Below are positions 3,126 through 48,683 of a stretch of 64,000 nucleotides of DNA, one piece after another; the first letter of the stretch is position 1; each line of letters begins with the position of its first letter. Made by a program: the position numbers and the translations under genes. The notes beneath the pieces are model-generated. The model was not told the DNA's origin, did not search any database, and saw only the letters and a program-made list of their open reading frames with translations. Source of the DNA: Macrostomum lignano (taxonomy: Eukaryota); NCBI GenBank assembly GCA_002269645.1, contig NIVC01002343.1, positions 1 to 64,000 of the forward strand. Direction: 5' to 3'.

Positions 3126-4188
3126 CAGTGTGCAAGTTGCTGGCTAGTGGAAGATTTTTATACTCACATTATTGTGTTAATCAGTAAATCTCTGTTTCTT
3201 AATACCCAACAGTTTGCTGTAGGCGGTGCCTGGTTTTCAATTCACCCTGAATGTCATTTGATAGAGTAACTAATAGGATTTCACTGATTGCACTGTTAAC
3301 TCATTCAGTAGAAGCTGTAATATCGTAAATGCGTTAAATTTAAGCATTAACAAATTATGACAGCTGTTAACTTGTGTTATGGTTAGGGTTCCTGCCGGTA
3401 CAGCTTTCCTGTTTTTTGCTGTGTACATATTCTGATAATACATTGAGAAAGCCATTGTGCTTATTTTGTCTGCTGAACTAATTTTGAACTCATTTCATTG
3501 CCTTGCTAATATTGAAAATGTTCTGTTCGTTTCGATGCTCTCTTATTTCGCTAATTTCAGTGAGAAGTTTGTTAGACAAAACTGTCACCATAAAGTGGCT
3601 ATCAATTAATTCTTAATTTATTAACGATTATCGAGTGTTTGTAAAGCTTTGGGGGTCACAACTTGACGTAGATAGGTTAGTTACCTTATGGACCCTGGGC
3701 TTAATTTCTTAATTAGCTAGTCGCATGGGCTTCTAAGTGATGATTTTGACACTATTTTCAGCGATTCTGGCATGTACGATCTTTGGAGAGTACTGTGCAT
3801 GTATTGTGGTTATGCTAGTAACAAATTGAATGGTGATTTAACAGAGAACTACTTAATGTGCAATGCAGATAGACAGAGTTAGCCTATAAAAGGACAGGAT
3901 TTTTCACTTGTATTTGTGTGATTCAAATTGTTATTTAACTTCTGCTGGTAACTGGAATACAGGGGAGTACATGAGCACTAATTTGATCGGAGATGGCTCA
4001 GAAAAATAGCACTCAAATACCCACCTTTTTCTGCGAAAATTTTCTCATATTGCCCCGTACTTGAAAATGAAACCGGACATTCTGGCATAAACCAATTATT
4101 ATCGGGAAAAGCTCCATTTTGTTTATTGAGATCCTCCAGCTCGATCGGATCAGTCCGAGCTGCTTTGTGTTGCCATTCGATTGCAGAT

Positions 4189-8259: not shown

Positions 8260-8417
8260 CTCGTCCGAGCTACTATACCACGTAGTTGAAAATTGAAAAA
8301 ATTAATATCAGGAAAAATGAAGCTCAGTTTAAAAAATTTCCAATCGTTTGTTTATTGAGATCCTCCAGCTCGATCGGATCAGTCCGAGCTGCTTTGTGTT
8401 GCCATTCGATTGCAGAT

Positions 8418-9861
8418 TCACGGCGAGTTGCAGAGGTTCCGCAGTTCGTCGAACTGGCTCGTGTCGAGGTTGCCTGTCAGCAGAGCCCAGCACTGCAGCC
8501 AGCCGTCAAACGGTTCGATTCCGTTTCTCATGCAGTTTCCAATCAGCAGGGTGTCGTGGATGGTGTACAGGCTGCCACCCGAGTTCCTGGGACCGCCGCC
8601 CCAAGTCTGGCGCGCCACCGTGGCTCCGTTAAGGTGAGTAGCGAAGTCCAGGCCATCAAAGTTGATTCCGACGCTCTCCACTCTCTGAACCGAGCCGACA
8701 TCCAGAGCGTTGTTGCTAGTGTAATGGCGGAAAAGCACATCTCCGGTTGGGAAAAACACTTTGGTAGAAATTCTTCCCTGGATGTCGGCATGGAAAGTGC
8801 TTGAGTACATGTCGTTTCTCGTGACATCGACGAATGCACCGAAGCATTTGGATCTGAAAGTTTCATCGGCAGCTTGCTTACAGTTGCATAATTCTAAGAG
8901 TGCTGTAGAGGCCTGTCATCTTAATATCATAGAGTGGAGCCCAAGTAACCTGGTACACAAATAATACGCCATTCTGCTCTGACACCAAGGAAGCTGTTTT
9001 TAGCAAAATGCGACGAAAATTGGACTTGGGATAGGGGAAGGCAAGCAAGAGGATAATTTGGGAATCCACATACAATGAGCTTAAATTGACATAATGGTCC
9101 CTAATTTTCCCCTTGCTCGTTCTTCTCTATCCCCAGTCAGGTTTTGGTCGCTTTTTGCCAAACCCTGCTTTACTGTGAGCAGAATAGCGTATCATTTGTG
9201 TACATACAATGTAGGTTACTCTGGCTCCAGTTTAGAGCTTAAGGCTTTATCTTGCATTAGTAAATGCGCGTAATACATATACATGTACTTACGAGAAGTT
9301 CATTCCAAATTTTCCCTGGAAGAACAGGCTGAACTTCTGTCCGTAGTTGAAGTATTTGTAGAATCCGGGAGTTGAGACCTTCACGTGGGAGCTGCTCGAG
9401 CCCTGCAGGCGGACTCCGTCAATCGAGTTCTGCTCGGCGATGCCCACCGGCTCAGCTGGGAATTCGCACGAGTTGGCCAGATTTTTGTAGCTCTTTCGAA
9501 AGTTGTACAGCAGGACAATTTGCATGGAAAACGAGAGCGACAGCAGGTCGGGGGGTGTCGCCGGAGACAGCTTCCCTCTAGCGATCATTCCAGGACTGCA
9601 GGCTGCAGCTACAGCCGCATGTGGCAGGCTGTAGCAGGCACGGCTGTCTGTCAGGTACACGGACTGCCGGCACCCGCTGCTCAGGGTGCAGCGGAGCACG
9701 CACTCGGACTCGCTGGGCGCGGGCACCGCCTCCACGCCGAACGGTTCAGCGGGACAGATGCTTTTGGGCTGGAACAGGGCGGAGCTGTCATCGCACTCTG
9801 CGTTGACGGCAATACAACTGGCCATCAGCAGCAGGCAGATGCGGCCTGCGGCGAATTCCAT
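8418..9861 (-). CDS. Secreted PAN/apple-like + ConA/LamG-like protein, copy B
   Basis: Near-identical to copy A (offset about 4229 bp); differs mainly in the interdomain linker. Confidence 0.65.
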
Positions 9862-11659
9862 GCTTTCTAAGAAATGTTTATAGGGTTATGTGGTTTCAGA
9901 AGGCAGTTTTTCAGGCTCCAAAGTTGTCGATTTCTGCAAGTAAAATTGTAGCCAGCCGCCACAGATGCTTTGGTTTAAATTCTTTCAATTCTGGCCGACA
10001 ATGGAAATTGTGGGGAGTTTGTCTCTGCTACAAGCAGGAAGACTTTCTCCCCCCCCCCAATATTTCCGGAGCAAAACATTTCCCGTAAACGTGCTTCGCG
10101 GCATGGATGCCAGTTTCCGTTATTTTCTTTTTGTTGCCAGCGCAACTGCGCTCAATAGTTCCCGCATCTGCTGCTCTGCGATCTGCCCCCTTTCCTTCTC
10201 ACGTTTGCATTGCCCCCGCTCTACCCCCCCCCACCGTGTTTACCGTCAAGTTTCTGTCGCTTCTGGTCTGTGCTACACTTTGCCATCACCTGCACCATGC
10301 ATGCACATCCGCTTTGCTCCTGCAGCCGAGTCAGCCTGCCGCGGTTTGAAGGCAGTCAGGCAGGACACCAGGCTTTTCCAATTCTCCCGTCTTAACCAAG
10401 GTAATCATTGTTTAATCCCATATAGAAGCCCGATCACGTGAGCTGAATTACATGTAGGATCAGGTATCCACTCCGATGTATTTCTGTTGAAATTCTCGCG
10501 CCTCTACCTGTACACGTAGCTTTTAGTCTGGTTTGGAATTTCTATAATTGCTTTCATTTTAAGCAAAACATCCAACAAGTTTTAATAATTTTGATTTCGA
10601 TTTTTAAGCGACGTTGTCACAACCGCAGAGAGGCATTGCTGTCCATTCCGCCGACTCCCCTGAGCAGGCACACAAGCGCGCGGATACGTACGCAGTCAAA
10701 CGCACAGGCACACGCTCACACGGGAGTGTACAGCGGCCCTAACTATATTTATCGTTAGGCGTGTACACTTCACTGCGCCTTGGCGTTAATTGAGCTCAAA
10801 ATTGATGTGACTACAACTAAGAATCGAGCCTGGGCCGCTGGCACATAAGAGCGTTGCACTTTTAGACCACTAGTCTGGGCTGTGGCGCTTAAATGGACGG
10901 CAGGCTGGACTCCCCTCAGTGATCCCAAAAATTCATTTCCGAATACCGTTGTACGAATTCACAGAGAAGCGGATTTTCACTGATTGAATTTGTTGAAATT
11001 AAGTTGCCACAAACAGACAAGCGGAACTGGAGTGGAGAACCAAAACCCAGCCAAAGTGTCAGATGCGCTGAACACTGAAAACTCGTGTATGTTAGCAATG
11101 AATGAAGCATGCTACAGACAGTATAAAGCTGACACAGAGGCCATGGTGAGATGCAAAAAGATTGTAAAAAACGGGGAACAACAAATATTGCCAGACAGAG
11201 TGAAATAATTTGCTATTCAGACAGTTGATTTGGTCGCATAAGAATGTTGCAGAGGCCAGGGGATCTTCAAGCTTCAGTGCAGCTCACTGTAAAACTGGGG
11301 CAAAATGACATCAGATTTGACTAGACTGAGCGGCCAGGCTGCATGCTGACAAGGATGGAGATTCCGCCAGAATCAGCCCTGCCCACTCGCTGATAAATGA
11401 TTACAATAAAAAAGACAAAGAAGTCAATCAGAAACGCGTGTCGGAAAAGTCAATCTTTACTAATAAAAGTAGTCAGCACAACATTTGCGTAACAATAAAA
11501 GCGAGAGGGAATAAAAGTTGCGGGTAAATGTAGACTATTTACAGGAATACAAGCGGATAACAAGCAGATTGCATAATAGGCTAATAAAACTTGATCTAGA
11601 TCCTCAGATCCAGGGATTCTAAGCAAAACAGATAGGGGATTCTCAATGCTGACTGATTA

Positions 11660-13450: not shown

Positions 13451-14632
13451 TCAGGCGGCGGTGTCCCCAGTTTCCGCCGCGGCCGCGGGCGAAGCGGATT
13501 CAGCAGCGGGTGCGGCAGCAGCGACGGTTTCGGCTGCGGCGGCCTCTTCGGCGATGCCTGTGGAGGCGGCAGTTGGAGGAGCTTCTTCAGCCGCGCTGAC
13601 CGCGGCGTCGACCGGATCGACAGGCACAGCGGCGGCGTCGGGGACGTCGGCGGCAGCGACCTGCGAGTCTGCGGCGGCAGCTTCAACGGCAGCAGCAAAT
13701 CCCCCCGCTTCAGCATCCTCGGGCTGCTGCGCGATAACCGGCTTCACGTCCATCACCAGGGCGTCGGAGTCCACGGCGGCGGCCGCCTGCGGCTCCTCCA
13801 GCTGCTGCAGCTGCTGCGAGTCCTGCGGCAGCTCCTGGCCGGCGCTGGTGAGAATACCGGCCGCCGCCGCCTCCTCCGAGCTGTTGAAGAAGATCTGCAC
13901 CGCCTGCTGCTGCCCATTGGCGGATACGGCGGGCCCACCCGCAGCGCTGACAGGCAGCTGGATGACGTACTGCACCGGCGCCGCCACCGCTGCCTCCTGC
14001 ACCGCATCCTGCGACAGCTGCACCGCCTGCTGCTGCTGATGGTCCGCGGCCGACACTGCAGCACCCTGTGCGGCCTGCGGGGGCGGGATGGTTGGGTCGG
14101 GACGGACTGAAGATGGTACTGCGGGGGCGGGGATGGTTATGTCACCCATTCTCACCCACCCACTCACCCACTCACTCACTCACCCAACTCATTCATTCAC
14201 TCACCTGCTTGCCAGTCTCGGTTTGCCCGGCAGGCCGCATCTCCTCCCTTGGCACGATGTCGATGAGGAAGTCGAACTGGTCGGTGTCGGGGTCGCCGAC
14301 GCTCATGGCGATGTCGTTACGCTGCAGAGTCCGCCGCCTGGCCCGCTCGGTGTGCGCCCAGGCCCGGATGGTGAGCTCCCGGATGAAGATCTCAGCGGCC
14401 TTGGAGAACAGCAGCGGCGCCTCGGCGGCTATCATCATGCCCTTGACGTCATCGTCCAGCTTCATGATCTTCTTGATGCGCGCCAGCGGCAGCTCGGCGT
14501 TCTTGAAGGCGGACAGCTCGGGGGCATGGACTCGATGGCCCGCAGCTCGTGGTTCCAGAACAGCAGTACGCGGGCCTCGATTTCGTTGCGGGCGACGTCG
14601 CCGGCGCGGGCGCCTGAGTTCTGCTGGTGCTG
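13451..14632 (-). CDS. NFYC: Nuclear transcription factor Y subunit gamma; exons 14632-14205 and 14074-13451; apparent 1-nt deletion at 14520-14524; no own upstream ATG
   Basis: [65 protein letters not shown] histone fold; [11 protein letters not shown]-terminal helix lies in an adjacent frame; phase-0 intron CAG|GTGAGT..CCCCCGCAG|GCC; Gln/Ala-rich tail. Confidence 0.92.
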
Positions 14633-14663
14633 CTGCAGTGTGCGGGCAGGGCAGCTGCGGCTG

Positions 14664-14945
14664 ACTGCTCACAGTGGGATGAGCTGGGGATCTGACTGCT
14701 CACAGTGGGATGAGCTGGGGATCTGACTGCTCACAGTGGGTGAGCTGGGGATCTGACTGCTCACAGTGGGATGAGCTGGGGATCTGACTGCTCACAGTGG
14801 GATGAGCTGGGGATCTGACTGCTCACAGTGGGTGAGCTGGGGATCTGACTGCTCACAGTAGGATGAGCTGGGGATCTGACTGCTCAGTGGGGTCAGGTGA
14901 GGGCATCTGACTGCTCAGTGGGGTCAGCTGGGGGGGCATCTGACT
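14664..14945 (-). repeat. 31-bp minisatellite between LYRM7 and NF-YC
   Basis: Plus-strand unit GATGAGCTGGGGATCTGACTGCTCACAGTGG, about 8 copies. Confidence 0.9.
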
Positions 14946-15229: not shown

Positions 15230-15592
15230 CTATCGGGACGAAGCCGCCCCGCCGCAGCCGCCAACCGAAGGCGCCTCCGTTGCCGGCGTTGCCGAAGGCG
15301 TCGGCGAGTCCTCCAGGTAGGTGTCCTCGCCCAGCTGCACACGGAAAGCGTCGCCCTCGGACTCCCTGGTTGCCCTGACAACGTGCGTCCTCAGCATTGC
15401 AGCGCAGTCCCTGGCAATCAGCAGCTGCTTGGCCACCGCCGCCGGGTCAGTCAGGGCTGCCTGCTCGCGGAAGCCAGTCCGGATGCGGTCGCCAACAATG
15501 CCAAGAGCGTAGGAGTCCCCAGCGAAGGTGACCTGGGCTGCCCGGTGCAGCGCCTTGTAGGCCTGCAGCACCGCCCTGCTTTGGCTGGCCAT
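15230..15592 (-). CDS. LYRM7: Complex III assembly factor LYRM7/MZM1-like
   Basis: VLQAYKALHRAAQVTFAGDSYAL..RIRTGF..MLRTHVV fits the LYRM7 pattern (VLQLFKTLHR..VFKND..AL..KI..EF..LLRTSV); ATG at 15592. Confidence 0.8.
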   Translation of the reverse strand: MASQSRAVLQAYKALHRAAQVTFAGDSYALGIVGDRIRTGFREQAALTDPAAVAKQLLIARDCAAMLRTHVVRATRESEGDAFRVQLGEDTYLEDSPTPSATPATEAPSVGGCGGAASSR

Positions 15593-16510
15593 TGGCTGCA
15601 GTGGTGCAGGCAGGGTAGCATGTGTGCCAGACAAAAAGTCTGTATGCATTCCATTGTATGTTTAACTCCTGTCCAACTTCCTATATTTCGATTATCTCTG
15701 GTCAGCTCAAAGTTGCTTGTCAATCTATTGGAAGCAACTGCAGAAACCACTCATAAATCTCAAAGGTACAAAAATATCTATAGGACTATTTAGGGATTCT
15801 TAATAGCATTGGATGCATCTAAAAAAGCATAGTTTCGGTATAGTCTAGTTAACTCTGCTTCTATTCAACATGTTGAACTCTTTTAATATGCATGCCTAGA
15901 AGTTACTAATTAGTGCTACATTTGCATTGTGTGCTTATCATTATTAATATTAGCAGCATCTATTCCACCTTTGTCTTGAATTGAAAAGTCATGTAGAAGC
16001 CATTTCTTAGACTATGAATACTGACTAAAGATAAATAACCATTGTATGTAAAATCAGTATTTGACCTAAAAATTGTTTCATTCTGGTTTTTATGCCTAGG
16101 AACTCTAACTTCAAGACTTTAATAGCATTGTCATTATTTAAAATTGAGTTTTTACAGAAAATTAAGTAGTAATTTTTGTTAAACTAAAAATTCCTATGGC
16201 TAGATCAGGGAATATATCCTAAAAAGCAATCTAGGTTATGTTTCTTAATAAAAAGAGCCATATATATATCACAACAAATTTTGATATTTTTTATCAAAGA
16301 TAGCTTTAAGACTACTTGGTTAAGATAGAATTCTTAGAGCAACATGCAAATGTGCATATTAGTTAAAAATAGAATGTGAACATTAGAACATATATAACCA
16401 TGTTGTATCATTTGCATACATTTAAAAATCAAAGCTAGGGATTTTGACTATGGCAAATAGCTTTTTTTTCACTCCTAAATCTTCTTGCCAATTGTATTCT
16501 ATTAAGACTA

Positions 16511-17448: not shown

Positions 17449-18797
17449 CGAGGGTTGTCAGAAAAGTTCTATGTATATTGTAATAACTTGAGAACGATAA
17501 ACAGTAGAAACATGAAAAGTTACAAATGTCTTCCTTAACATCTATTCACTCAAAGTATGAGCCCTCAGCTTCAATGCACTTCTCCCAACGCCGCACCAGC
17601 CCGTCAATGCCTGTAGTCATGCAATTGTTCGTCACGGCGGCAATGCCAGCCTTGTAGGCCTGATTCACGTCTTCCTCTGTGCTGAAACGCTGACCTCGCA
17701 TCGACTCCTTGATGTGAGGGAAGAGGAAAAAGTCGCATGGACTTAAGTCCGGGGAATAAAGCGGATGCGGAAGAATTTCCCACCCCCACGACTCAATTGT
17801 AGCCAGCACGCTTTGCTTTCGGTGCGGGGCTGCGTTGTCGTGAAGCAGAATCGGGCCAGCTGCGTGAAGTGCAGGTCTTTTGTCCCGAATGGCATGCCGA
17901 ACTTTCACCAAAACCGACAGGTAGAAATCACCATTGACCGTCTGCCCCACTGGCACAGGCTGATCGAACAACAGACCCTCCCGGTCGAAGAAAGTCACGT
18001 GCATGACCTTCAGCTGGCCGATGCTCCGGATGGCCTTTTGAGGTCGCGGAGAACCTGGCCTGCACCAAGTGGCACTCTGCCGCTTCAACTCCGCCTCCCA
18101 AGAATGTGCCCAGGTTTTGTCATAGGCAACAATCCTTTGCAAGAACGCCATGCCCTCCCGCCGACACCGCTGCAGGTTGGATGCGCACATGGCGACCCGC
18201 CGAGCCCGCTGATCGTCAGTGAGCAGATGCGGCACCCACTTGGCACAGACCTTGCGCATCCCAAGGTCCTCAGTCAGGATCTTGTGGACTGAGTCGTGGG
18301 ACACCCCTATGGCATCAGTCAGCTGCCTGGTGGTCAGTCTCCGGTCCTGCAACACGGCTGCCTCCACCTGACTCACCAGGCTATCAGTCCGAGCACTTGT
18401 TGGTTGTCCACTACGTGGCTTGTCGTCGAGGTCTTCTTTACCGTTGTGAATGGCAATAGCCCAGCAGCGAATCGTCTTGTAAGATGGGCAAAAGTCTCCT
18501 ATGGTCTGCCGCATTTCTTCAAAAATCTCAGTTGCTGAACGCCCCTGAAGGACATGAAACTTGATGATCGCTCGATTGTTGCATTTAGAAAAACTCTCTC
18601 ATGGGACGGAATGTGCCATGGGTGTGGTTGAAAAATTACTGTCATTTTGGCTAGAAATGGTATGGTGCTCTAAAACTGAAGCTAGGCAGCTAGCGACTCT
18701 TTATATATGTATATATCTATGACTAAAACCCCAACTCTTCAGCTATTCATAGAGCTGAGCTATTCTCTAATACACAGAACTTTTCTGACAACCCTAG
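17449..18797 (-). mobile_element. Full-length mariner (DD34D) transposon, 1349 bp
   Basis: 28-bp TIRs CGAGGGTTGTCAGAAAAGTTCTATGTAT with 2 mismatches; TA duplications at 17447-48 and 18798-99. Confidence 0.95.
17546..18602 (-). CDS. Mariner transposase (about 350 aa), with one extra base just after the ATG at 18602
   Basis: WVPHLL, YDKTW, LHDNAAPH, YSPDLSPCD with exactly 34 residues between the 2nd and 3rd Asp; open frame from 18598 (ESFSKCNNRAIIKFHVLQGRSATEIF). Confidence 0.9.
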
Positions 18798-22084: not shown

Positions 22085-22548
22085 ATAAAGTGTAGCAGTT
22101 CCCATTGCTCATAAAAGCAACAGGAAAGTGTAGCAGTTCCCATTGCTCATAAGTGACAGGAAAGTGTAGCAGTTCCCATTGCTCATAAGTGACAGGAAAG
22201 TGTAGCAGTTCCCATTGCTCATAAGTGACAGGAAAGTGTAGCAGTTCCCATTGCTCATAAGTGACAGGAAAGTGTAGCAGTTCCCATTGCTCATAAGTGA
22301 CAGGAAAGTGTAGCAGTTCCCATTGCTCATAAGTGACAGGAAAGTGTAGCAGTTCCCATTGCTCATAAGTGACAGGAAAGTGTAGCAGTTCCCATTGCTC
22401 ATAAGCGACAGAAAAGTGTAGCAGTTCCCATTGCTCATAAAAGCTACAGAAAAGTGTAGCAGTTCCCATTGCTCATAAAAGCTACAGAAAAGTGTAGCAG
22501 TCCCCATTGCTCATAAAAGCCACAGGAAAGTGTAGCAGTTCCCATTGC
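22085..22548 (+). repeat. 36-bp minisatellite directly upstream of the DnaJ gene
   Basis: GTGACAGGAAAGTGTAGCAGTTCCCATTGCTCATAA, about 13 copies. Confidence 0.95.
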
Positions 22549-22574
22549 TCAAATCTTTGCATGCAGAAGCAGCA

Positions 22575-27235: not shown

Positions 27236-27769
27236 TAGAGGTCATCGGATCGGGTCAGAGGTCGCCTTTCCGCACATTTGCTGTCGGCGGGTTCATCTTT
27301 GGAGTTGCATAGCAGGCTTAGCAAAAATATTTTGTCCTACGAATAGTTTTTCCTCATTCGCAAATTGCACCCAGCCTATTAGATGTTGCTTCCCTCGACT
27401 GTGTTATATTTGTCTTATATTTGTTATATTTGTTATATCTGTGTTACGTAGACCAGTTTTCGTTCTCACAGGTTTCCCAATTGCCTATGCGCTCGTAGTA
27501 GCGTTTCCTGCATGAAATGCGTTGTGATTATTAAATCTGTTTAATTCGCTTTTTAAGCCTATGAGGTTGTGTACACACTTCTGTTTGATATCAACTTTGC
27601 AGTCCCTTTCATGAACTGCTGTGTCTAGAATTCAATATTATAATTTATTTAAATACATTCTTGCTTATCCAGAGATACTTAATGAGCTTTGCCTTGCTGT
27701 TTTGCCAATGTGAGACCTCAGATTCCACTGCCCCTGATCATCTCAGTCACCCGCTCTGACACCCCCACT

Positions 27770-28190
27770 ACCTCCCCTGACCGATCTTCAATCCTACCAC
27801 TCTCCCCTGACCGATTTCTCAATCCTACTACCCTCCCCTGACCGATTTCTCAATCCTACTACCCTCCCCTGACCGATTTCTCAATCCTACCACTCTCCCC
27901 TGACCGATTTCTCAATCCTACTACCCTCCCCTGACCGATTTCTCAATCCTACTACCCTCCCCTGACCGATTTCTCAATCCTACTACCCTCCCCTGACCGA
28001 TTTCTCAATCCTACTACCCTCCCCTGACCGATTTCTCAATCCTACTACCCTCCCCTGACCGATTTCTCAACTACCCCCTGACACCCTACTACCCTCCCCT
28101 GACCGATTTCTCTATCACCCATGACTCCCTACTACCCTCCCCTGACCGATTTCTCTATCATCCCCTGACACCCTAGTACCCTCCTGACAT
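27770..28190 (+). repeat. 31-bp pyrimidine-rich minisatellite upstream of BLOC1S6
   Basis: CCTCCCCTGACCGATTTCTCAATCCTACTAC, about 11 copies. Confidence 0.92.
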
Positions 28191-28271
28191 ATTGCTCGTT
28201 CGTCCCCTCTGACGCCCCTACATAAACAATTTCCGCATCATCCGCCCTGACGCCCCACCGTGTCACCGCAG

Positions 28272-28751
28272 TCGGATCCTCAGCTCGCTGCCGACCCCGC
28301 TGAGGCGCCCTCACTGGAGGCCGCGGCAACTTCCGCCAGCATCGCCGCGCTGTCCGCCGGCGCTCTCGCCTTTCACCGGCCCAGCTTGGCTGCCCGCGAG
28401 GCGGCGCTAGCGGAGCTGCTCACCTGCCAGCAGTCGTTCCTGGAAAGCGTGCAGCACGAGAGGGCGCACCTGGCGGACTGCTCAGGCCTGCAGGAGATGG
28501 AGTGCCGGCTTGAGCAGGTGCGCGAGTACCAGCAGCGGCTGGCCCGGCTGCGCAAGGAGATGCACAGGCAGGCGGAGCGGCTGCAGCGGCTGAAGAAGCG
28601 GGCGATCCAGCTGCAGCAGGCCAAGCAGACCGAGCTGCTCAAGCGTCAGGCCGAGCGGGAGCGCGAGCTCGAGGCCGAACGGCAGCTCATCGCCCGGCCT
28701 GCTGAGCCGCCGCCGGCTGCTCAGGCGGCCAAACCTTCAGGCTCCTCCTAG
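28272..28751 (+). CDS. BLOC1S6: BLOC-1 subunit 6 (pallidin); no own ATG near the start
   Basis: LAELLTCQQSFLESVQHE..YQQRLARLRKEM..LKKRAIQLQQAKQ..ERQLIARPA aligns with the pallidin C-terminal half (LQELTQNQ..YHAKLVNIRKEM..LKKRALKLQQ..EKQLTARPA). Confidence 0.88.
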   Translation, partial: SDPQLAADPAEAPSLEAAATSASIAALSAGALAFHRPSLAAREAALAELLTCQQSFLESVQHERAHLADCSGLQEMECRLEQVREYQQRLARLRKEMHRQAERLQRLKKRAIQLQQAKQTELLKRQAERERELEAERQLIARPAEPPPAAQAAKPSGSS

Positions 28752-30110: not shown

Positions 30111-30564
30111 GGTCCGGTGCCTAAGGTGGGATGCAGTTCCCCGTTCAAGTGCTCACCTTCATTCTCCATCCCACCGGATTAACTTCTCCCCACCCTGTTT
30201 TACTTTCTTTATTGCTGACATTGGGTGCACCTTGGAGCAGAGGGGGTCTCAAGCCGATCTCGATTTCTCCTTGAGATTATTAATCCGCTGGCGCTGCTCG
30301 GAGGCCTGATCTGCGCTTCTTCCTGCTACTAGAAGTCGGTCAGGCGGGTGTCAAATCACCGGGCTGGCTGGCTGATTCGGGAGTGCCCGGCTGCCTGCAC
30401 TTTCATTACCGCGACTGTTTATTAGATTTGTCGTTGTTGCGGCCTCGGGCTCTGCCTGCCTGCCTGCCGTGCAACTGTGTGCGATGGGGAGAACTTTTCT
30501 ATGCACTGCCGTGGCACGGTTGGCCAGGTCTCTGATCCTGGACTTGGGCTAATTTTACTCCGAG

Positions 30565-31110
30565 TTAGGGGTCACTGAACATGGAGTTAGGGAGTCATTG
30601 AACAGGAGTTAGGGGTCATTGAACAGGAGTTAGGGGGTCATTGAACAGGAGTTAGGGGGTCATTGAACAGGAGTTAGGGGGTCATTGAACAGGAGTTAGG
30701 GGGTCATTGAACAGGAGTTAGGGGGTCATTGAACAGGAGTTAGGGGGTCATTGAACAGGAGTTAGGGGGTCATTGAACAGGAGTTAGGGGGTCACTGAAC
30801 AGGGAGTCTGGGGGTCACTGAACAGGGAGTTAGGAGGTCACTGAACAGGGAGTCTGGGGGTCACTGAACAGGGAGCTAGGGGGTCACTGAACAGGGAGTC
30901 TGGGGGTCACTGAACAGGGAGTCTGGGGGTCACTGAACAGGGAGTCTGGGGGTCACTGAACAGGGAGTCTGGGGGTCACTGAACAGGGAGTTAGGGGGTC
31001 ACTAGATTGGGAGCTTGTGGGTCACTGAACTGGGAGTCTGGGGGGGGGTCACTGAACAGTGAGTTAGGGGTCACTGGGAGTTTGGAGGTCACTGAATTGG
31101 GAGTCAGCGA
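30565..31110 (+). repeat. 22/23-bp G-rich minisatellite upstream of IDI1
   Basis: CATTGAACAGGAGTTAGGGGGT grading into CACTGAACAGGGAGTCTGGGGGT. Confidence 0.92.
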
Positions 31111-31182
31111 ACTGGGAGTAATCAGGAGAAATACAGGTGTCATTGAATTCAGGCTCTAATTAAAACTTGCCTGATAAACTTC

Positions 31183-31908
31183 ATGCCTCCTCTCCCAGCC
31201 CCATCGCTTGCCGGCCGGTTGGCTGGCCGCCTGCTGTGTGGCAGCGCGGCTCCGCCGTCCCCTCCGACATCAGGCACGGTGCACCCGTCGCAGGCGGCCC
31301 TCTTGTCGGAGCAGTGCATCCTGGTGGACACCTCAGACCGGGTGCTGGGCGCCGCCTCCAAGGAGTTCTGCCACCGGGCCGACAATGTCCGCGCCGGCCG
31401 GGCGCTGCACCGAGCCTTCAGCCTCTTCCTGCTGGACAGCGGCGGCCGCCTGCTGCTGCAGCGGAGGTCGCTGCTGAAGCTGACCTTCCCCGGCAGGTGG
31501 ACCAACACTTGCTGCTCTCACCCGCTGCACACGGCCGATGAGCTGCAGCCCGGCCTGGGCGTGAAGCTGGCCGCGGCCCGGCGCACCCGGCTGGAGCTCG
31601 GCCTGCGGCTGCCGCCCGGCCAGATGGAGCACCTGGCGACCATCGTCTACCAGGCCGACTGCGACTCCACCGGCCAGTGGGCCGAACACGAGGTCGATCA
31701 CGTGCTGCGCCTGCGGCTGCCGGCCGGCGCGAACGAGGATGTGCAACGGAAGCTGTGGCCGGATCCCAACGAGGTGGCCGCCACGGCTTGGCTGGCCGAC
31801 GCTGAGCTGGACGACTTTGTGGCCGAGCGGCGAGCTGCGGGCGAACCGCCCACGCCCTGGTTTGAGCTGGTCCTGAGCTCGCATCGGCACCTGCTGTTTG
31901 ACGGCTAG
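31183..31908 (+). CDS. IDI1: Isopentenyl-diphosphate delta-isomerase (type 1), intronless
   Basis: LLSEQCILVD, LHRAFSLFL, LLLQRRS..KLTFPGRWTNTCCSHPL, WAEHEVDHV, PNEV, TPWF. Confidence 0.96.
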   Translation: MPPLPAPSLAGRLAGRLLCGSAAPPSPPTSGTVHPSQAALLSEQCILVDTSDRVLGAASKEFCHRADNVRAGRALHRAFSLFLLDSGGRLLLQRRSLLKLTFPGRWTNTCCSHPLHTADELQPGLGVKLAAARRTRLELGLRLPPGQMEHLATIVYQADCDSTGQWAEHEVDHVLRLRLPAGANEDVQRKLWPDPNEVAATAWLADAELDDFVAERRAAGEPPTPWFELVLSSHRHLLFDG

Positions 31909-32944
31909 CCGCTTGTCCTGAGCCGCTTGAGTCTGCTGCGTTTCTTGGGATGGGATCCGGGATTAGGCTTGGCCGCCTCCAGTTCTCACCTGAATGCGCA
32001 TTTCTGAAAAGCTGAAGCTTTCATAGAAACCGCCTCTGCCATTATTAGATCTGCTCTTTTAGAAAGCTTTCCACTTCATAGAAACACTTAAAAGAGTTTA
32101 GAAAGAGAAGAGCCCCTGTTCCTGGACCAGCATTTCTAAGAATTTGTCTATTTCCTAGAAATGTCAAAACGTTTCTTAGAAGCAGTCATTGCCGTTCCTG
32201 GATCTGCTTTTCTAACCGTGGTTTTATCGTTTCGAATCGGCGAAAAGATTCATACAAAAACTGTTCGTGCCATTTCTAAGAATATTTGGCACCGACATCG
32301 AGCCGTTTCTCAGATTCTGAAATAGTCAAATCCGGTAAAATAGTCAAATCCGGTAAAATAGTCAAATCCGTTGCGCCCAAATCTTGCCGTGTTCCAGAAA
32401 ATTCAAACAAAAATTTCTGCTTCTATTTCTGCTAGTATTTGAACTTTGCCGAACGCAAAACTGAAAATCATTTTGAAATATTTTCAATATTTCTTAGAAT
32501 TGCAGCATGACTCAATTGTTGCCACGCAATCGCCCTCTGAGATTTAATAGTTTGCTGTTCAGATCGCTTAACAATGTTGAATCCGGTTAAACAGGTGACC
32601 TGTCTGTCTGGCTATCTGTAAATGCATTCATTAACTGTCATTTGTTCAATATTTCCTCTGTGAAGCTGTGCGCAGGTGTCTGACTTTGACTTCCTTTTTT
32701 ACTTCAATGAAAAATATCTACCACGCACCACTTCCTTCCTGCTTAATGACGATTTTTAATTACTTTTTGTTAAAGGTTTCCTGACTTGCTTTTGTTTTGA
32801 ACACGGAAGTTGATATTTTAATTATACTAAGCGATTCATATTTCCATTTTCAAATGATTTCGTGAAGGTTATTTGGAGTTTATTTCTTCTGGTACTTTCC
32901 CCAGATAACCCTGTTTGCTCAGATCTCAATCATCGGATGTGACC

Positions 32945-33470
32945 GCTCATTTCACAGATGCTCAGGTGTGACCGCTCAGTTCCCAGATCCTCAGGTGTGA
33001 CCGCTCAGCTCCCAGATCCTCAGGTGTGACCGCTCAGCTCCCAGATCCTCATGTGTGACCGCTCAGTTCCCAGATCCTCAGGTGTGACCGTTCAGCTCCC
33101 AGATCCTCAGGTGTGACCGTTCAGCTCCCAGATCCTCAGGTGTGACCGCTCAGCTCCCAGATCCTCATGTGTGACCGCTCAGTTCCCAGATCCTCAGGTG
33201 TGACCGTTCAGCTCCCAGATCCTCAGGTGTGACCGTTCAGCTCCCAGATCCTCAGGTGTGACCGCTCAGCTCCCAGATCCTCATGTGTGACCGTTCAGCT
33301 CCCAGATCCTCAGGTGTGACCGCTCAGCTCCCAGATCCTCAGGTGTGACCGCTCAGTTCCCAGATCCTCAGGTGTGACTGCTCAGTTCCCAGATCCTCAG
33401 GTACCAGGGTATGACCGCTCAGCTCCCAGATCCTCAGGTATTACCGCTCAGCTCCCAGATCCTCAGGTGT
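32945..33470 (+). repeat. 29-bp minisatellite GTGTGACCGCTCAGCTCCCAGATCCTCAG
   Basis: About 18 copies; most junctions read CAG|GT. Confidence 0.95.
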
Positions 33471-33579
33471 GACCGTGGCCACCTCAAAATCACTGCACAC
33501 TGAAACTCGAACCCACACACCAACCTGTCGCAATTGCTGCCCCCTGGCCTCAACCCCATCAGCAACCGAACTAGCCGCC

Positions 33580-35645: not shown

Positions 35646-36309
35646 AAGCCGCCAGTAAATGCCTTAAGCAGGCGCAGGGATCAGTGAGAATGGCGGGGGA
35701 TTCGAGCGGCAAGGCAGGCAGCTTCAGTGGGGAATTCAGCCGGTGTCAAATTGCCGCTGAAAGCCACTGAGCCGCAACGGTGCCGAGTCGCAAACCCGGG
35801 GATTTTCATTGAGCTCTGTTTGCCCTGGCGCAGCGCCCCATTGTTCCGCATCCTGGCGGATGTTTGCCCCCAGTTCAACTCGGCAGCCTTCGGCGCCGCT
35901 TCCCCAAGTCCCGGAGATTGTCAATATGCCATTTTATTGGTGGCAATTGGCTCCCAGTGGGTGCGGCAACTGCCAGCCAGGTATTCAGCTGCGACTGCAG
36001 GCTGGGATAGCTTTCAGCTCCCGCGTGTCCCCTGTGTGCTCGGTAATTTAATGCTGCAAATATTGTGCTCTGTAATGCCTGTAGCTGAAGCTGTCATTTG
36101 TAAATAAAATTTAAGCCTTGCCAGCTCTGCTTGTCAAACTGACACGCGGTGAGTGAGATCAGTCTCTGTTTTGCTGTTTATTTAAATTACTGCTGATAGG
36201 GGATTCAAGTGTTAATTATGCACTAATTATTGATTATCAATGAGTTCTACCTGACTCAACACTGCTCTGTTTGTGCGTTTCTGCTGCCAAGTGACCTGCA
36301 TTGTCTGGA

Positions 36310-36424
36310 GAGTGACAATCCAGCGTCTACCGAGTGACATCCAGCGTCTGCCGAGTGACATCCAGCGTCTGCCGAGTGACACTCCAGCGTCTACCGAGTG
36401 ACACTCCAGCATCTACCGAGTGAC
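36310..36424 (+). repeat. Short 20-22-bp repeat abutting the NUP58 ATG
   Basis: TCCAGCGTCTACCGAGTGACA(C), about 5 copies. Confidence 0.85.
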
Positions 36425-38245
36425 ATGTCCGCCTTCTCATTCGGCGCCAGTCCGGCTGCCTCGGCGGGCCCGAAGCTGGCCACGGTGGCCCCCCTGGCGG
36501 CGGGCAGCTCCAGCACCCTGGGCGGCCTCAACCTGTCGCTGACGCCGCAACAGCCGCCCGCATTCGGGGCCGCGGCGTCAACGGGCGGCTCCTTGGCAGC
36601 GGCCGGGGCGGCCGGCGGTACGCCTGGAGCGGCTGGCGGCCCAGCGGCGGCCGGGCAGTCTTCAACCATCGTGGGCCTCAACTTGTCCTCCACCACGCCC
36701 CTCAGCTCCCTCGCCTCCGCGCCCTCGGCGCCGCCAGCAGCCGGCCAGCCGGCGCCCTTTGGCTTTGGCGCCTCAGCCACTGGCGCCAAGCCCGCCACCG
36801 CCGCCGCTCCGTCTGGCGCCCCAGCGCCGGCTTTTGGCAGCTTTTTTGGCGCTGCCTCGGCATCGACGACCGGCGCACCTGCTGCTGCGGCACCTGGGGC
36901 CGCCCTTAAGGGCCTCGGAGGCGCTGGGGCCTCCACTCAGTCGTCCACCATCGTAGGGCTCAACCTGTCCACCGCGCCGCTGTCTCTGGCAGCCCCGGCT
37001 GCTGCCTCAGCTGCAGCCAAGCCGGCACTCAGCCTGACGCTCGGAGCCGCTCCGACCGCTGCGGCCGCTCCAGCGCCAGGAGGCTTCTCGTTCGGCACCT
37101 CGGCTCCGGCGCCTGGCGCTTCCACTTTGGCGGCTGCGGCAACATCAGCGCCAGCAGCTGCGGCGCCAGCCTTTCGTGGCCTCGGCGGCGTCCCGGGTTC
37201 GAGTCTCGCCAGCGGCTCCGCGGCTGCTGGCAGCGGCGGCGCGGGAATCGGCGGTTTTGGCGCCGGCAGCTCAAGCGGCAGCGGTGGCGCCGGCGCTAGC
37301 GGCTCCACGACGGAGGCGAAGAGCGTGCTGGAGTCGGAGATCCCGCATGAGGTCCTGGTGACTGTGGAGGCCTTCCGCCGCCACGTCGCTTCCCAGCGGG
37401 AGCTGCGGCTGCGCATGGAGGCGGACAGGGCGGGGCTGGCGCAGGAGCTCGGCAGGGTGGCGGAAGAGGCGGAGTCGGTGGCGCAGGCCGTTAGGCGGTT
37501 GGCCACCGGCCGGGCCGCCAGCGTCAGCGCCGCCGTGAGGCTTCGCAGCGACCTGGCGGAGCTCGGCAGGCAGCTGTCGGTGGCCCGTCGGAGCTTCGAG
37601 CAGCCGGCCTGGCAGCAGGCGGACAGCCAGGAGGCGCTGGACCTGCTGGGCCAGCTGGTGACCGAGGCGGCCGGCAAAATTCGCCTGCTGAGGGCGGAGA
37701 TCGAGGACCTCGAGGCTGCGCTCTGTCTAGACGGCAGCAGCGGCCGGGTCAGCGGCCAGGAGCTGCTCAACGCGCTGCGGCAGGCGCGTGAGGCGCTGGT
37801 TGCCTGCGCCGCCGAGCTGGGCGCCGCTAGCGCCACCTGCGACCGCCTGCGCGCCGACTTCCTCGCCTACCGGCGCTCCAGCGGCGACTTCCGCAACCCG
37901 TTCGCCGCCTCCGCCTCGCCGCGCGCCGCCTCCGCTACCTCCCCGTTTTCCGGCCGCGGCCGCCACTCGAACTTCGGGCCGCCGCCTTGCGACGACTCGC
38001 TGGCTGCTGCTTCTGCGGCCGCCACCGCCGCCGCAGCCGCCGCCTCCGTGGCCACCCAGCCTGCGGCGGCCGCTCCGTCCCTCTTCGGCGGCGCCGGCGG
38101 CTTCGGTGGATTTTCCGCTGCTGGACAGGCGGCGCCGGCGTTCGGCGCCACTGCGGCCTCAGCGCCTTTCGCCGGCTTCGGCGCCGCGGCTGGCGGCCCC
38201 GGCGGCGGCCTCTTTGGCTTCTCGGCCGCTAAGCGGAAGCCGTGA
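36425..38245 (+). CDS. NUP58: Nucleoporin p58/p45 (NUPL1)-like, intronless
   Basis: FG/FSFG-rich N-terminus, central coiled coil (EIPHEVLVTVEAFRRHV..; FLAYRR..GDFRNPF..FGPPP), second FG region at the C-terminus. Confidence 0.8.
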   Translation: MSAFSFGASPAASAGPKLATVAPLAAGSSSTLGGLNLSLTPQQPPAFGAAASTGGSLAAAGAAGGTPGAAGGPAAAGQSSTIVGLNLSSTTPLSSLASAPSAPPAAGQPAPFGFGASATGAKPATAAAPSGAPAPAFGSFFGAASASTTGAPAAAAPGAALKGLGGAGASTQSSTIVGLNLSTAPLSLAAPAAASAAAKPALSLTLGAAPTAAAAPAPGGFSFGTSAPAPGASTLAAAATSAPAAAAPAFRGLGGVPGSSLASGSAAAGSGGAGIGGFGAGSSSGSGGAGASGSTTEAKSVLESEIPHEVLVTVEAFRRHVASQRELRLRMEADRAGLAQELGRVAEEAESVAQAVRRLATGRAASVSAAVRLRSDLAELGRQLSVARRSFEQPAWQQADSQEALDLLGQLVTEAAGKIRLLRAEIEDLEAALCLDGSSGRVSGQELLNALRQAREALVACAAELGAASATCDRLRADFLAYRRSSGDFRNPFAASASPRAASATSPFSGRGRHSNFGPPPCDDSLAAASAAATAAAAAASVATQPAAAAPSLFGGAGGFGGFSAAGQAAPAFGATAASAPFAGFGAAAGGPGGGLFGFSAAKRKP

Positions 38246-38761: not shown

Positions 38762-39170
38762 CCTAGCAATTCCCCAGCCCATACCCCGCCTCCGCGATTC
38801 CCCAGCCCATACCCCGCCTCCGCGATTCCCCAGCCCATACCCCGCCTCCGCGATTCCCCAGCCCATACCCCGCCTCCGCAATTCCCCAGCCCATACCCCG
38901 CCTCCGCAATTCCCCAGCCCATACCCCGCCTCCGCAATTCCCCAGCCCATACCCCGCCTCCGCAATTCCCCAGCCCATACCCCGCCTCCGCAATTCCCCA
39001 GCCCATACCCCGCCTCCGCAATTCCCCAGCCCATACCCCGCCTCCGCAATTCCCCAGCCCATACCCCGCCTCCGCAATTCCCCAGCCCATACCCCGCTCC
39101 GCAATTCCCCAGCCCATACCCCGCTCCGCAATTCCCCATCCCATACCCCGCCTCCGCAATTCCCCAGCCC
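38762..39170 (+). repeat. 28-bp C-rich minisatellite upstream of TAF10
   Basis: CCCCAGCCCATACCCCGCCTCCGCAATT, about 14 copies. Confidence 0.95.
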
Positions 39171-39207
39171 ATGTCAGCAGCAGCGAAGCCGCCCCCGACG
39201 CTTGCAG

Positions 39208-39699
39208 AACGGTGACGAGAGCCTCTCCCCGGCTGAGCAGCAGCCGCAGCAGCAGCAGAGGCCGCAGTTCCAGCAGCCGGTGTCCCTGTCGGACTTCTTC
39301 CTGCAGCTGGACGAATACCAGCCCACCATCCCGGACCGGGTCACTCAGTACTACCTGGAGCGCAGCGGCCTGGAGGTGGCCGACCAGCGCCTGCTCCGCC
39401 TGGTGTCCCTAGCCGGCCAGAAGTTCATTTCAGACATCGTGAGCGACGCCATGCACCACTGCCGGGCCAGGCAGGGCGGCCCCGCGGCCAAGCGGGCCAG
39501 CGGCGGCACCCCGGGAGCCGCGGCCGCCGGCACCGCCTCCGCCGCCCCCGGAGCTGCCGGGGCTGCCGGCTCGGCTGCCGCTGGCGGCGGCGGCTCCTCC
39601 GGCCAGCCCGGCAAGCGCCTGACACTGACAATGGAGGACCTCGGCCCGGCCTTCCAGGAGTGCGGCATCAACGTGCAGCGGCCGCCGTATTTTACCTGA
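39208..39699 (+). CDS. TAF10: TFIID subunit 10; start codon not in frame in the genomic sequence
   Basis: LSDFFLQLDEYQPTIPDRVTQYYLERSG..RLVSLAGQKFISDIVSDA..LTLTMEDLGPA..GINVQRPPYFT. Confidence 0.95.
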   Translation, partial: NGDESLSPAEQQPQQQQRPQFQQPVSLSDFFLQLDEYQPTIPDRVTQYYLERSGLEVADQRLLRLVSLAGQKFISDIVSDAMHHCRARQGGPAAKRASGGTPGAAAAGTASAAPGAAGAAGSAAAGGGGSSGQPGKRLTLTMEDLGPAFQECGINVQRPPYFT

Positions 39700-48210: not shown

Positions 48211-48683
48211 CTCAGGCCCGGTTTATCCTCCCCTTCAAGGCTTTAAGCTGCCTGCAGGGGTCTGTCCAGCACTTCTTGTTGATTGGCACTTGCCACCGGC
48301 TCCAAAGCAGGCCGCTAATCTGCCGGATTTCTGGCGGCACAATTTTCCCCTTCCCCTTTGAGCGCTTTGGATCTCCCTGATTACCGCGCTGTACATCAGT
48401 GGACTCAGCACAAGATGAGGTGAGCAGTGAGGAAGGGATTAGTGAGCTCAGGCTGCACTCAGCAGAATTAGTCTGGCAGTCACCACCCGGTGGTTAAAAA
48501 TAGCCGCAGATCTGGCGACTGTCTATGGCCGGGAGGGCCTCGGGCCCGCGGTGTACAGTCAGCTCTAGTGAGCGATCTATTCCTAGGCAGCTAACACAGC
48601 TAGCAGCGAGAGCAGTGGTTGGAAAGCACAGATTGGGAGCCCGAGCGGATTCTAAAGTGCACTCAGGCCAGCCAGTCGCCAGC

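What the first reader, a model, noticed from the sequence alone, without database searches (positions are those of the whole stretch)
28240..28500. Start-codon-less genes whose ORF opens in phase 0 after a 3' splice AG: candidate spliced-leader-supplied AUG (BLOC1S6 is the clearest case)
Seen: the BLOC1S6 frame has no ATG until 75 codons in (28497), well inside the conserved region, and no usable ATG upstream. It opens after CTGAC (branch-like A at 28250) ..TCACCGCAG|TCG GAT CCT CAG, in phase 0. NF-YC shows the same pattern (CTGCAG|CAG CAC at 14632; first ATG 35 codons later, past the conserved LLFW helix), as does TAF10 (TTGCAG|AAC GGT GAC at 39208; first in-frame ATG 81 codons later). Candidate acceptors of LYRM7 (15595), NUP58 (36410) and IDI1 (31153) are also in frame. 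Established: flatworm spliced leaders end in AUG, and this AUG can act as initiator (shown in Schistosoma). Inference: these genes depend on trans-splicing for their start codon, giving MSDPQL.., MQHQQN.. and MNGDES.. The SL RNA gene is not in the window.
Basis: partly seen in the sequence, partly recalled or inferred. Interest (0 to 1): 0.85.

Follow-up and report, generated by a model that had tools for sequence, protein, structure and literature searches.

The report
Genes that borrow the spliced-leader AUG
In this piece of the flatworm Macrostomum lignano genome, three conserved genes (BLOC1S6, TAF10, NF-YC) have no start codon of their own and most likely take it from the AUG that ends the trans-spliced leader RNA, a mechanism already documented in other flatworms.

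Summary
The window is Macrostomum lignano scaffold NIVC01002343.1, positions 1-64000 (assembly Mlig_3_7). The sequence facts hold. BLOC1S6, TAF10 and the N-terminal exon of NF-YC are each open from an in-frame stop into the conserved domain with no ATG. The first ATG lies 75, 81 and 35 codons in. The M. lignano spliced leader (SL) ends in ...TTGCATG. GenBank's RNA-seq-guided models call BLOC1S6 and TAF10 5'-partial in all three homeologous scaffolds. None has an upstream exon. The other two junctions are less certain. NF-YC may use 14632 or 14620. All of these sites are in frame. The "phase 0" argument carries little weight, because 59-84% of AGs inside these GC3-rich ORFs are phase 0 anyway. 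LYRM7, NUP58 and IDI1 have their own ATGs. NF-YC is frameshifted in this copy at a C5 run that is C6 in a homeolog. An SL-donated initiator AUG is established in Schistosoma and Echinococcus, so these are new examples of a known mechanism. No SL-containing reads could be examined.

The parts
28248..28250 (+). In-frame TGA that closes the BLOC1S6 frame upstream. No upstream ATG can be read through into the ORF.
28266..28271 (+). It matches 2 of 3 specified positions of the M. lignano [T/C]TNCAG motif. The AG is TG in homeolog NIVC01002440.1.
   Evidence: motif from PMC8629364
28278..28283 (+). CCTCAG, a second in-frame candidate acceptor (exon+1 = 28284, would give M-LAADPAE). It is conserved in all three homeologs and overlaps the first codon of the GenBank CDS.
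28281..28751 (+). BLOC1S6 (pallidin) CDS as annotated in GenBank: 5'-partial, 156 aa. The open frame starts at 28251. Snapin_Pallidin domain at 28347-28616. First in-frame ATG at 28497.
27767..28184 (+). Minisatellite array (31/44-nt units containing CCCCTGAC) that fills the spacer directly upstream of BLOC1S6. Presumed outron or intercistronic spacer.
39202..39207 (+). TTGCAG, a perfect [T/C]TNCAG acceptor in front of TAF10 (exon+1 = 39208, phase 0). It is TTGCTG in homeolog NIVC01002284.1.
39208..39699 (+). TAF10 CDS as annotated on this scaffold (PAA58699.1, 'Mlig011002g5, partial', begins NGDESLSPAEQ). TAF10 domain at 39286-39693. First in-frame ATG at 39451. The model has an 87-nt non-canonical gap in the Ala/Gly-rich stretch.
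38766..39172 (+). 28-nt minisatellite between NUP58 and TAF10. The TAF10 frame runs through it without a stop or an ATG.
14205..14668 (-). NF-YC first coding exon. The N-terminal frame opens at 14668 after a TGA. CTGCAG acceptor at 14638-14633 (exon+1 = 14632). Further in-frame CAGs follow down to CAG|AAC at 14621|14620, which is the annotated transcript start deduced from two copies. First ATG at 14527. The C5 run at 14520-14524 breaks the frame in this copy. The histone fold runs from 14519 to the GTGAG donor after 14205.
15230..15601 (-). LYRM7. It has its own ATG at 15592. A perfect CTGCAG acceptor at 15601-15596 (exon+1 = 15595, in frame) would give M-P-MASQ. The GenBank CDS here is truncated to 15583.
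31147..31908 (+). IDI1-like NUDIX gene. It has its own ATG at 31183. ATTCAG| candidate acceptor at 31152|31153. The GenBank CDS starts at 31186, immediately after the ATG. In homeolog NIVC01002440.1 the ATG is CAG (TTCCAG|CCT).
36404..38245 (+). NUP58-like gene. CTCCAG| at 36409|36410 (in frame). Its own ATG at 36425 is annotated as a complete CDS. It shares the transcriptional-unit name Mlig011002 with TAF10.

Best explanation
The window is part of a same-strand cluster of compact, GC3-rich housekeeping genes of Macrostomum lignano: DnaJ, BLOC1S6, IDI1, CWC25, NUP58 and TAF10 on the plus strand, and LYRM7 and NF-YC on the minus strand. The genes are separated by minisatellite-filled spacers. 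This is the layout described for SL-resolved transcriptional units in this species.

BLOC1S6, TAF10 and NF-YC have lost, or never had, a genomic start codon. Their pre-mRNAs are trans-spliced to the 35-nt spliced leader at an AG a few codons into the open frame. The leader's terminal AUG then becomes the first codon, in frame.

Which steps are shown and which are inferred:
- Shown by sequence: the lack of an ATG, the upstream in-frame stop, and in-frame candidate acceptors.
- Shown by the literature: the species' SL ends in AUG, and such an AUG is used as initiator in Schistosoma and Echinococcus.
- Inferred from GenBank models: the mRNA bodies start inside the ATG-less frame and have no upstream exon.
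- Not shown: the SL junctions themselves, and initiation at the SL AUG in M. lignano.

Most likely junctions:
- TAF10: 39207|39208.
- BLOC1S6: 28271|28272 and/or 28283|28284.
- NF-YC: 14633|14632 and/or 14621|14620.
Every one of these is in frame.
For: Organism and locus:
- The BLOC1S6 ORF is 99% identical to the M. lignano protein PAA59237.1, labelled 'partial'.
- Window coordinates equal NIVC01002343.1 coordinates.

Spliced leader:
- The SL ends in ATG (PMC8629364; PMC5173321). PMC10468722 calls it a 'translation start codon'.
- Flatworm precedent is documented in PMC9851317, PMC12582326 and PMC3510090.

No genomic ATG before the conserved domains:
-.

GenBank models:
- They were built from RNA-seq with SL-read-guided boundaries (PMC5730564).
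- They are 5'-partial and single-block at the 5' end in three homeologous scaffolds: BLOC1S6 and TAF10.
- The TAF10 start at 39208 coincides with a perfect TTGCAG|.
- The NF-YC transcript start deduced from two copies is 14620, directly after an AG.
- NUP58 and TAF10 carry the same transcriptional-unit name (Mlig011002 g1/g2, g7, g5), so TAF10 is a downstream cistron that needs an SL cap.

No cis first exon:
- No ATG...GT[AG]AG first exon in phase 0 exists between any of the three genes and the preceding same-strand gene.

Robustness of the frame:
- The alternative AGs are 12 nt apart (BLOC1S6, NF-YC). Loss of one AG, as in the homeologs, keeps the frame.
Against: - No SL-containing read, cDNA or peptide was available. 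The protein databases hold no M-initiated version of these proteins.
- The annotated BLOC1S6 CDS start (28281) is not adjacent to any AG in any copy.
- Annotated 5' ends are demonstrably imprecise. The LYRM7 model here lacks its own ATG. The three TAF10 copies start at three different positions.
- AG-adjacency of annotated starts is only weakly above background (3 of 6 against 0.19; p about 0.09).
- Phase 0 is expected for most AGs inside these ORFs.
- The window's NF-YC copy is frameshifted, so that copy may be non-functional or mis-assembled.
Confidence: 0.8

Rival explanations
1. Each gene has an unannotated cis-spliced 5' exon that carries a normal ATG. The AGs are ordinary intron acceptors.
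For: M. lignano genes average about 5 introns (PMC5730564). The cis and trans acceptor motifs both end in CAG. The annotated 5' ends are imprecise.
Against: RNA-seq-based models in three homeologous scaffolds show no upstream exon. No phase-0 ATG...GT[AG]AG exon exists in the spacers, which are mostly minisatellites. TAF10 is gene 2 of a unit shared with NUP58.
Confidence: 0.07
2. Translation starts without the SL AUG. Either a near-cognate codon is used (for example in-frame GTG 28260 or CTG 28314 in BLOC1S6), or the first internal ATG is used and gives N-terminally truncated proteins.
For: In-frame GTG/CTG codons exist. Internal ATGs exist at 28497, 39451 and 14527.
Against: The internal ATGs would remove about 50 conserved residues of the pallidin domain and half of the TAF10 histone fold. 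GTG 28260 lies upstream of both candidate acceptors and of the annotated transcript start. A cap-proximal AUG is supplied by the SL, and such an AUG is shown to be used in other flatworms.
Confidence: 0.05
3. The ATG-less state is an artefact. The window copies would be decaying duplicates or mis-assembled, and a functional copy elsewhere has a genomic ATG.
For: M. lignano DV1 carries duplicated chromosomes. The window's NF-YC has a C5/C6 frameshift. Another homopolymer difference lies at about 48806. The IDI1 copy in NIVC01002440.1 is pseudogene-like.
Against: All three assembled copies of BLOC1S6 and TAF10, and both available NF-YC copies, lack an ATG in the same way. Their ORFs keep high GC3 and intact domains. 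No fourth copy appears in the protein databases.
Confidence: 0.05

Closest known systems
Schistosoma mansoni / S. japonicum mRNAs that use the SL 3'-terminal AUG as initiator methionine (Cheng, Cohen, Ndegwa & Davis 2006, J Biol Chem 281:733; cited in PMC9851317 and PMC12582326)
   Same: The flatworm SL ends in AUG. Some conserved genes have no genomic AUG, and the SL AUG is in frame with the orthologous N-terminus.
   Different: That work is in parasitic Neodermata and has experimental proof of initiation. Here the host is the free-living, early-branching Macrostomum, and the evidence is only genomic and from annotation.
Echinococcus granulosus SL-bearing transcripts (PMC3510090)
   Same: 143 of 187 SL clusters are full-length only when the SL ATG is counted as the start. 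Some need it in order to match conserved N-termini. Use of the SL AUG is conserved between species.
   Different: That evidence is EST-based, with the SL physically present on the cDNAs. Here no SL-bearing cDNA could be inspected.
slORFs: ORFs created by SL addition in nematodes, tunicates and kinetoplastids (slORFfinder, PMC9851317)
   Same: The start codon is contributed by the leader rather than by the gene.
   Different: Those mostly involve near-cognate NUG codons within the leader and often give alternative or overlapping ORFs. Here a canonical AUG would start the main conserved ORF.
M. lignano SL-resolved operons with repeat-rich spacers (Ustyantsev & Berezikov 2021, PMC8629364)
   Same: Same-strand conserved genes, spacers made largely of tandem repeats, and [T/C]TNCAG at the trans-splice sites. 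NUP58 and TAF10 share one transcriptional unit.
   Different: That paper does not analyse the reading frame of the SL AUG or start-codon-less genes.

Membership tests
Flatworm mRNAs initiated at the spliced-leader AUG | The organism trans-splices an SL whose last three bases are AUG | tested here: met
   The window is M. lignano NIVC01002343.1. The SL is ...TTATTGCATG (PMC8629364; PMC5173321).
Flatworm mRNAs initiated at the spliced-leader AUG | No genome-encoded in-frame AUG between the upstream in-frame stop and the conserved domain | tested here: met
   Met for BLOC1S6, TAF10 and the NF-YC N-terminal frame. Not met for LYRM7, NUP58, IDI1, CWC25 and DnaJ.
Flatworm mRNAs initiated at the spliced-leader AUG | The SL AUG is in frame with the conserved ORF at the acceptor used, with no stop in between | tested here: met
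   All plausible acceptors are phase 0 and stop-free: 28272 and 28284; 39208; 14632 to 14620. One exception: GAGAG|C (exon+1 = 39222), the site suggested by the NIVC01002284.1 model, is out of frame.
Flatworm mRNAs initiated at the spliced-leader AUG | The mRNA actually carries the SL at that acceptor | tested here: inconclusive
   No reads were available. Indirect support: GenBank 5'-partial models begin at 39208 (exact), 14620 (after an AG) and 28281 (not at an AG). TAF10 is the second gene of unit Mlig011002.
Flatworm mRNAs initiated at the spliced-leader AUG | Ribosomes initiate at the SL AUG | not testable with these tools
   This needs Ribo-seq, N-terminal proteomics or a reporter assay.
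M. lignano SL-resolved operon (Ustyantsev & Berezikov 2021) | Adjacent same-strand genes with a repeat-adjusted intergenic distance below 1 kb | tested here: met
   NUP58 to TAF10: 962 nt, of which 407 are minisatellite. CWC25 to NUP58: about 1.37 kb with about 0.6 kb of repeats. The other spacers adjust to about 1.0-1.2 kb, which is borderline.
M. lignano SL-resolved operon (Ustyantsev & Berezikov 2021) | Downstream genes are SL trans-spliced out of one precursor | tested here: inconclusive
   The shared unit name Mlig011002 for NUP58 (g1, g7) and TAF10 (g2, g5) implies one assembled precursor. The SL reads themselves were not seen.

The most novel reading that the evidence does not exclude
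Genomic start codons and SL acceptors may be interconvertible at the same nucleotide position in M. lignano.

The evidence comes from the three IDI1 homeologs, which carry TTCATG|CCT, TGCATG|CCT and TTCCAG|CCT at the identical site.
- The last of these is a perfect trans-splice acceptor. Using it would put the SL AUG exactly where the other copies have their own ATG.
- TGCATG equals the last 6 nt of the SL.
- The GenBank CDSs of the two ATG-bearing copies start precisely after this position, as if SL-trimmed reads mapped there.

This would show one of two things. Either it is the route by which genes become start-codon-less (ATG to AAG/CAG, buffered at once by the SL AUG). Or it is the reverse: the SL AUG written back into the genome by cDNA-mediated conversion.
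Probability: 0.15. Interest if true: 0.6.

Novelty: new member of a known kind. Interest (0 to 1): 0.3.

Why it matters
- Annotation: these proteins are deposited as 'partial' and lack their true N-terminus. Any pipeline that ignores the SL AUG will mis-call or drop such genes in Macrostomum.
- Biology: obligate dependence on the SL AUG would extend from parasitic flatworms to an early-branching free-living one. That argues the trait is old in Platyhelminthes.
- Scale: three of about nine neighbouring conserved genes show it. This hints that it could be common, which is testable genome-wide with existing public RNA-seq.
- Mechanism: the mechanism itself is not new.

Tried and rejected
1. SL RNA gene or SL relics in the window. 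The best ungapped match is 20/35. The 13/18 match upstream of DnaJ (22563) is one of six such hits and is consistent with chance. No SL-donor match and no Rfam family were found. The idea that these intronless genes are retrocopies carrying SL relics is dropped.

2. Direct transcript evidence. The protein databases hold no Met-initiated BLOC1S6 or TAF10 from RNA assemblies. Exact look-ups of guessed LYRM7 and BLOC1S6 products failed. No M. lignano NF-YC protein surfaced in the homology search, although one is called on the scaffold.

3. Supplementary tables of PMC5816591, PMC5730564 and PMC5173321. The stored text has no entry for these genes, so their TRANSSPLICED flags could not be read.

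4. Reading exact SL junctions from GenBank CDS starts. I considered several rules: the start equals exon+1; an exon+1 minus 3 overlay of the ATG; mapped overhang; coverage-trimmed StringTie ends. No single rule fits all eight boundaries. Two readings remain open.

5. Phase 0 as evidence. Rejected.

6. A start-codon difference in the 693-aa gene at about 48870. This was only a coordinate shift caused by a C-run indel.

Full report
**What the window is.** The BLOC1S6-like ORF is 99% identical to GenBank PAA59237.1, 'hypothetical protein BOX15_Mlig020879g1, partial [Macrostomum lignano]'. An exact-product look-up places the window's IDI1 gene on NIVC01002343.1 at the same coordinates as in the window. 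The window is therefore positions 1-64000 of that Mlig_3_7 scaffold. Two homeologous scaffolds carry the same gene order at about 92-99% identity:
- NIVC01002284.1 (loci L001, L003, L007)
- NIVC01002440.1 (loci L002, L005, L008)

**Checking the observation.**
- BLOC1S6:
  - The frame opens at 28251, right after TGA 28248-50, and runs to 28751.
  - Its only in-frame ATGs are at 28497 and 28560.
  - The Pfam domain spans 28347-28616.
  - 172 representative homologues align from about residue 18-26 of the ORF counted from 28272, and the first Met is residue 76.
- TAF10:
  - The frame is open from 38767, through a 28-nt minisatellite.
  - TTGCAG|AAC lies at 39207|39208. The first in-frame ATG, at 39451, is inside the histone-fold domain.
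  - Animal TAF10s start 20-35 residues before the conserved LxDFxxQLxxYxPTIPD motif.
- NF-YC (minus strand): CTGCAG|CAG lies at 14633|14632. The conserved LLFW helix follows, and the first ATG is at 14527.

These statements are correct. Three points need qualifying.
1. The 'phase 0' feature is expected. In the window's coding regions 59% of all AG dinucleotides are followed by codon position 1. The figure is 84% in BLOC1S6, 70% in TAF10 and 82% in the NF-YC histone fold, because of CAG/GAG/AAG codons.
2. In this scaffold the NF-YC N-terminal frame and the histone-fold frame differ by one base, at a C5 run (14520-14524). NIVC01002440.1 has C6 and one continuous frame.
3. LYRM7, NUP58, IDI1, CWC25 and DnaJ all have their own ATG at the expected N-terminus.

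**What bears on the mechanism.**
- The M. lignano SL is CGGTCTCTTACTGCGAAGACTCAATTTATTGCATG. About 30% of genes receive it, the junction motif is [T/C]TNCAG, and operon spacers are repeat-rich (PMC8629364; PMC5173321).
- The Macrostomum genome paper of 2023 explicitly calls the terminal ATG a 'translation start codon' (PMC10468722).
- In Schistosoma the SL AUG was shown to act as initiator. More than 40 cDNAs need it (Cheng et al. 2006, as summarised in PMC9851317; also PMC12582326).
- In Echinococcus, 143 of 187 SL-bearing clusters are full-length only with the SL ATG (PMC3510090).
- The SL gene is not in the window.

**Evidence from the deposited annotation.** The GenBank models were built from RNA-seq. 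Transcriptional units were cut at mapped SL-read peaks, and ORFs were called on the genome-derived transcripts, so an SL ATG cannot appear in them (PMC5730564).
- BLOC1S6 is a 5'-partial, single-block CDS of 156 aa in all three scaffolds. It starts at the CAG that corresponds to 28281.
- TAF10 is 5'-partial in all three scaffolds:
- On this scaffold it starts at 39208 ('NGDESLSPAEQ', PAA58699.1).
  - The other two copies start 15 and 18 nt further in.
- NF-YC:
  - It is called from 14618 in the shifted frame here, and from the AAC equivalent to 14620 in NIVC01002440.1.
  - The only transcript start compatible with both is 14620, directly after CAGCAG|.
- NUP58 and TAF10 share the unit name Mlig011002 (g1/g2, g7, g5). 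TAF10 is therefore a downstream cistron of a common precursor. The NUP58-TAF10 spacer is 962 nt, of which 407 nt are minisatellite.
- None of the models has an upstream exon.
- A scan of the spacers finds no phase-0 ATG...GT[AG]AG first exon for any of the three genes.

**How precise are the junctions?** They are not fully resolved.
- The annotated 5' ends are not reliable to the base:
  - The LYRM7 model here begins at 15583, downstream of its own ATG.
  - BLOC1S6's 28281, CWC25's 33541 and one TAF10 start are not next to any AG.
  - Overall AG-adjacency is 3 of 6 on this scaffold against a background of 0.19 (p about 0.09).
- Two readings fit:
  - Several boundaries are true, partly alternative, SL sites (39208; 14620; GAGAG|C in the copy that lost TTGCAG).
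- Homeolog comparison adds two facts:
  - TAF10's TTGCAG is TTGCTG in NIVC01002284.1.
- For BLOC1S6 and NF-YC the alternative AGs are 12 nt apart, so every candidate keeps the SL AUG in frame. The predicted N-termini are:
  - BLOC1S6: M-SDPQLAADP or M-LAADP
  - NF-YC: [10 protein letters not shown] or M-NSGAR
  - TAF10: M-NGDESL
- The conclusion that the SL AUG is in frame does not depend on which AG is used. The exact N-termini do.

**Verdict.**
- The rivals are each at about 0.05-0.07: a hidden cis exon, non-AUG or internal initiation, and decayed or mis-assembled copies.
- The mechanism is established in flatworms and is already assumed by Macrostomum annotators. This is therefore a new set of members of a known kind, not a new kind.
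- The claim of extra in-frame acceptors in LYRM7, NUP58 and IDI1 adds little. Those genes have their own ATG. With so few genes and reader-selected sites, an excess of in-frame sites cannot be shown.

**The most unusual thing seen.**
- The IDI1 start site reads TTCATG|CCT here, TGCATG|CCT in NIVC01002284.1 and TTCCAG|CCT in NIVC01002440.1.
- TTCCAG is a perfect acceptor at exactly the position where SL addition would recreate the same Met-Pro-Pro N-terminus.
- TGCATG equals the last six bases of the SL.
- Both ATG-bearing copies are annotated as 5'-partial from the very next base.
- The CAG copy is otherwise pseudogene-like, with a 54-nt deletion and a premature stop. This may therefore be decay plus coincidence. 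It deserves a look with copy-specific SL reads.

Noticed in passing
window 31180-31188; L002 2246-2254 (NIVC01002440.1); L001 14745-14753 (NIVC01002284.1): The IDI1 start codon differs between homeologs: TTCATG|CCT (window), TGCATG|CCT (the last 6 nt of the SL) and TTCCAG|CCT (a perfect trans-splice acceptor at the same position). The GenBank CDSs of the two ATG-bearing copies start exactly after the ATG. The CAG copy also has a 54-nt in-frame deletion in the NUDIX core and a premature stop, and it is not annotated.
   Followed up: partly
window 14661-14933, 22087-22551, 27767-28184, 30562-31076, 32917-33475, 36284-36426, 38766-39172: Every gene of the cluster is immediately preceded by its own minisatellite array (periods 22-36 nt, each a different sequence). 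Many units contain a CTGAC or GTGAC core and CAG. The arrays make up much of each spacer, from about 40% to just under 60%. Whether they serve as outron signals or are neutral filler is unknown.
   Followed up: partly
window 14520-14524 (minus strand); L008 365-370: NF-YC has a C5 run here and C6 in NIVC01002440.1. The window copy is therefore frameshifted between the N-terminal helix and the histone fold. GenBank translates the N-terminal part of this copy in the wrong frame (CDS from 14618). This is either an assembly homopolymer error or a dead copy.
   Followed up: partly
window 28279-28281: The GenBank BLOC1S6 CDS starts at CAG 28281 in all three homeologous scaffolds, yet no AG precedes 28279-28281 in any copy. 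No rule I tried for how the boundary was set explains this start.
   Followed up: partly
window 15583-15592 (minus strand): The LYRM7 model on this scaffold (117 aa, 'QSRAV...') begins downstream of the gene's own ATG (15592), directly after GGCCAG|. The NIVC01002440.1 copy is annotated complete (120 aa). This is either a truncated model or an out-of-frame internal SL site.
   Followed up: no
window about 39490-39580: The TAF10 model on this scaffold has an 87-nt gap with no GT..AG ends in the Ala/Gly-rich linker (134 aa, against 157 aa for the uninterrupted frame). This looks like an in-frame length polymorphism between copies rather than an intron.
   Followed up: no
window 48806 and 48870-50950: There is a C6 versus C5 difference from NIVC01002440.1 just upstream of the 693-aa gene's ATG (48870). 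At least one further indel splits that gene into two overlapping frames here (ORFs 48504-49574 and 49130-50950). The gene has no Pfam match.
   Followed up: partly
window 17546-18598 (minus), 12-1079 (minus), 4130-4408 / 8359-8637 and 5060-5662 / 9289-9885: Three further features: a mariner/Mos1-type transposase ORF (HTH_48 plus DDE); a weak retrotransposon gag-like ORF at the left edge; and a direct duplication of about 4.2 kb that carries a PAN-domain ORF.
   Followed up: no
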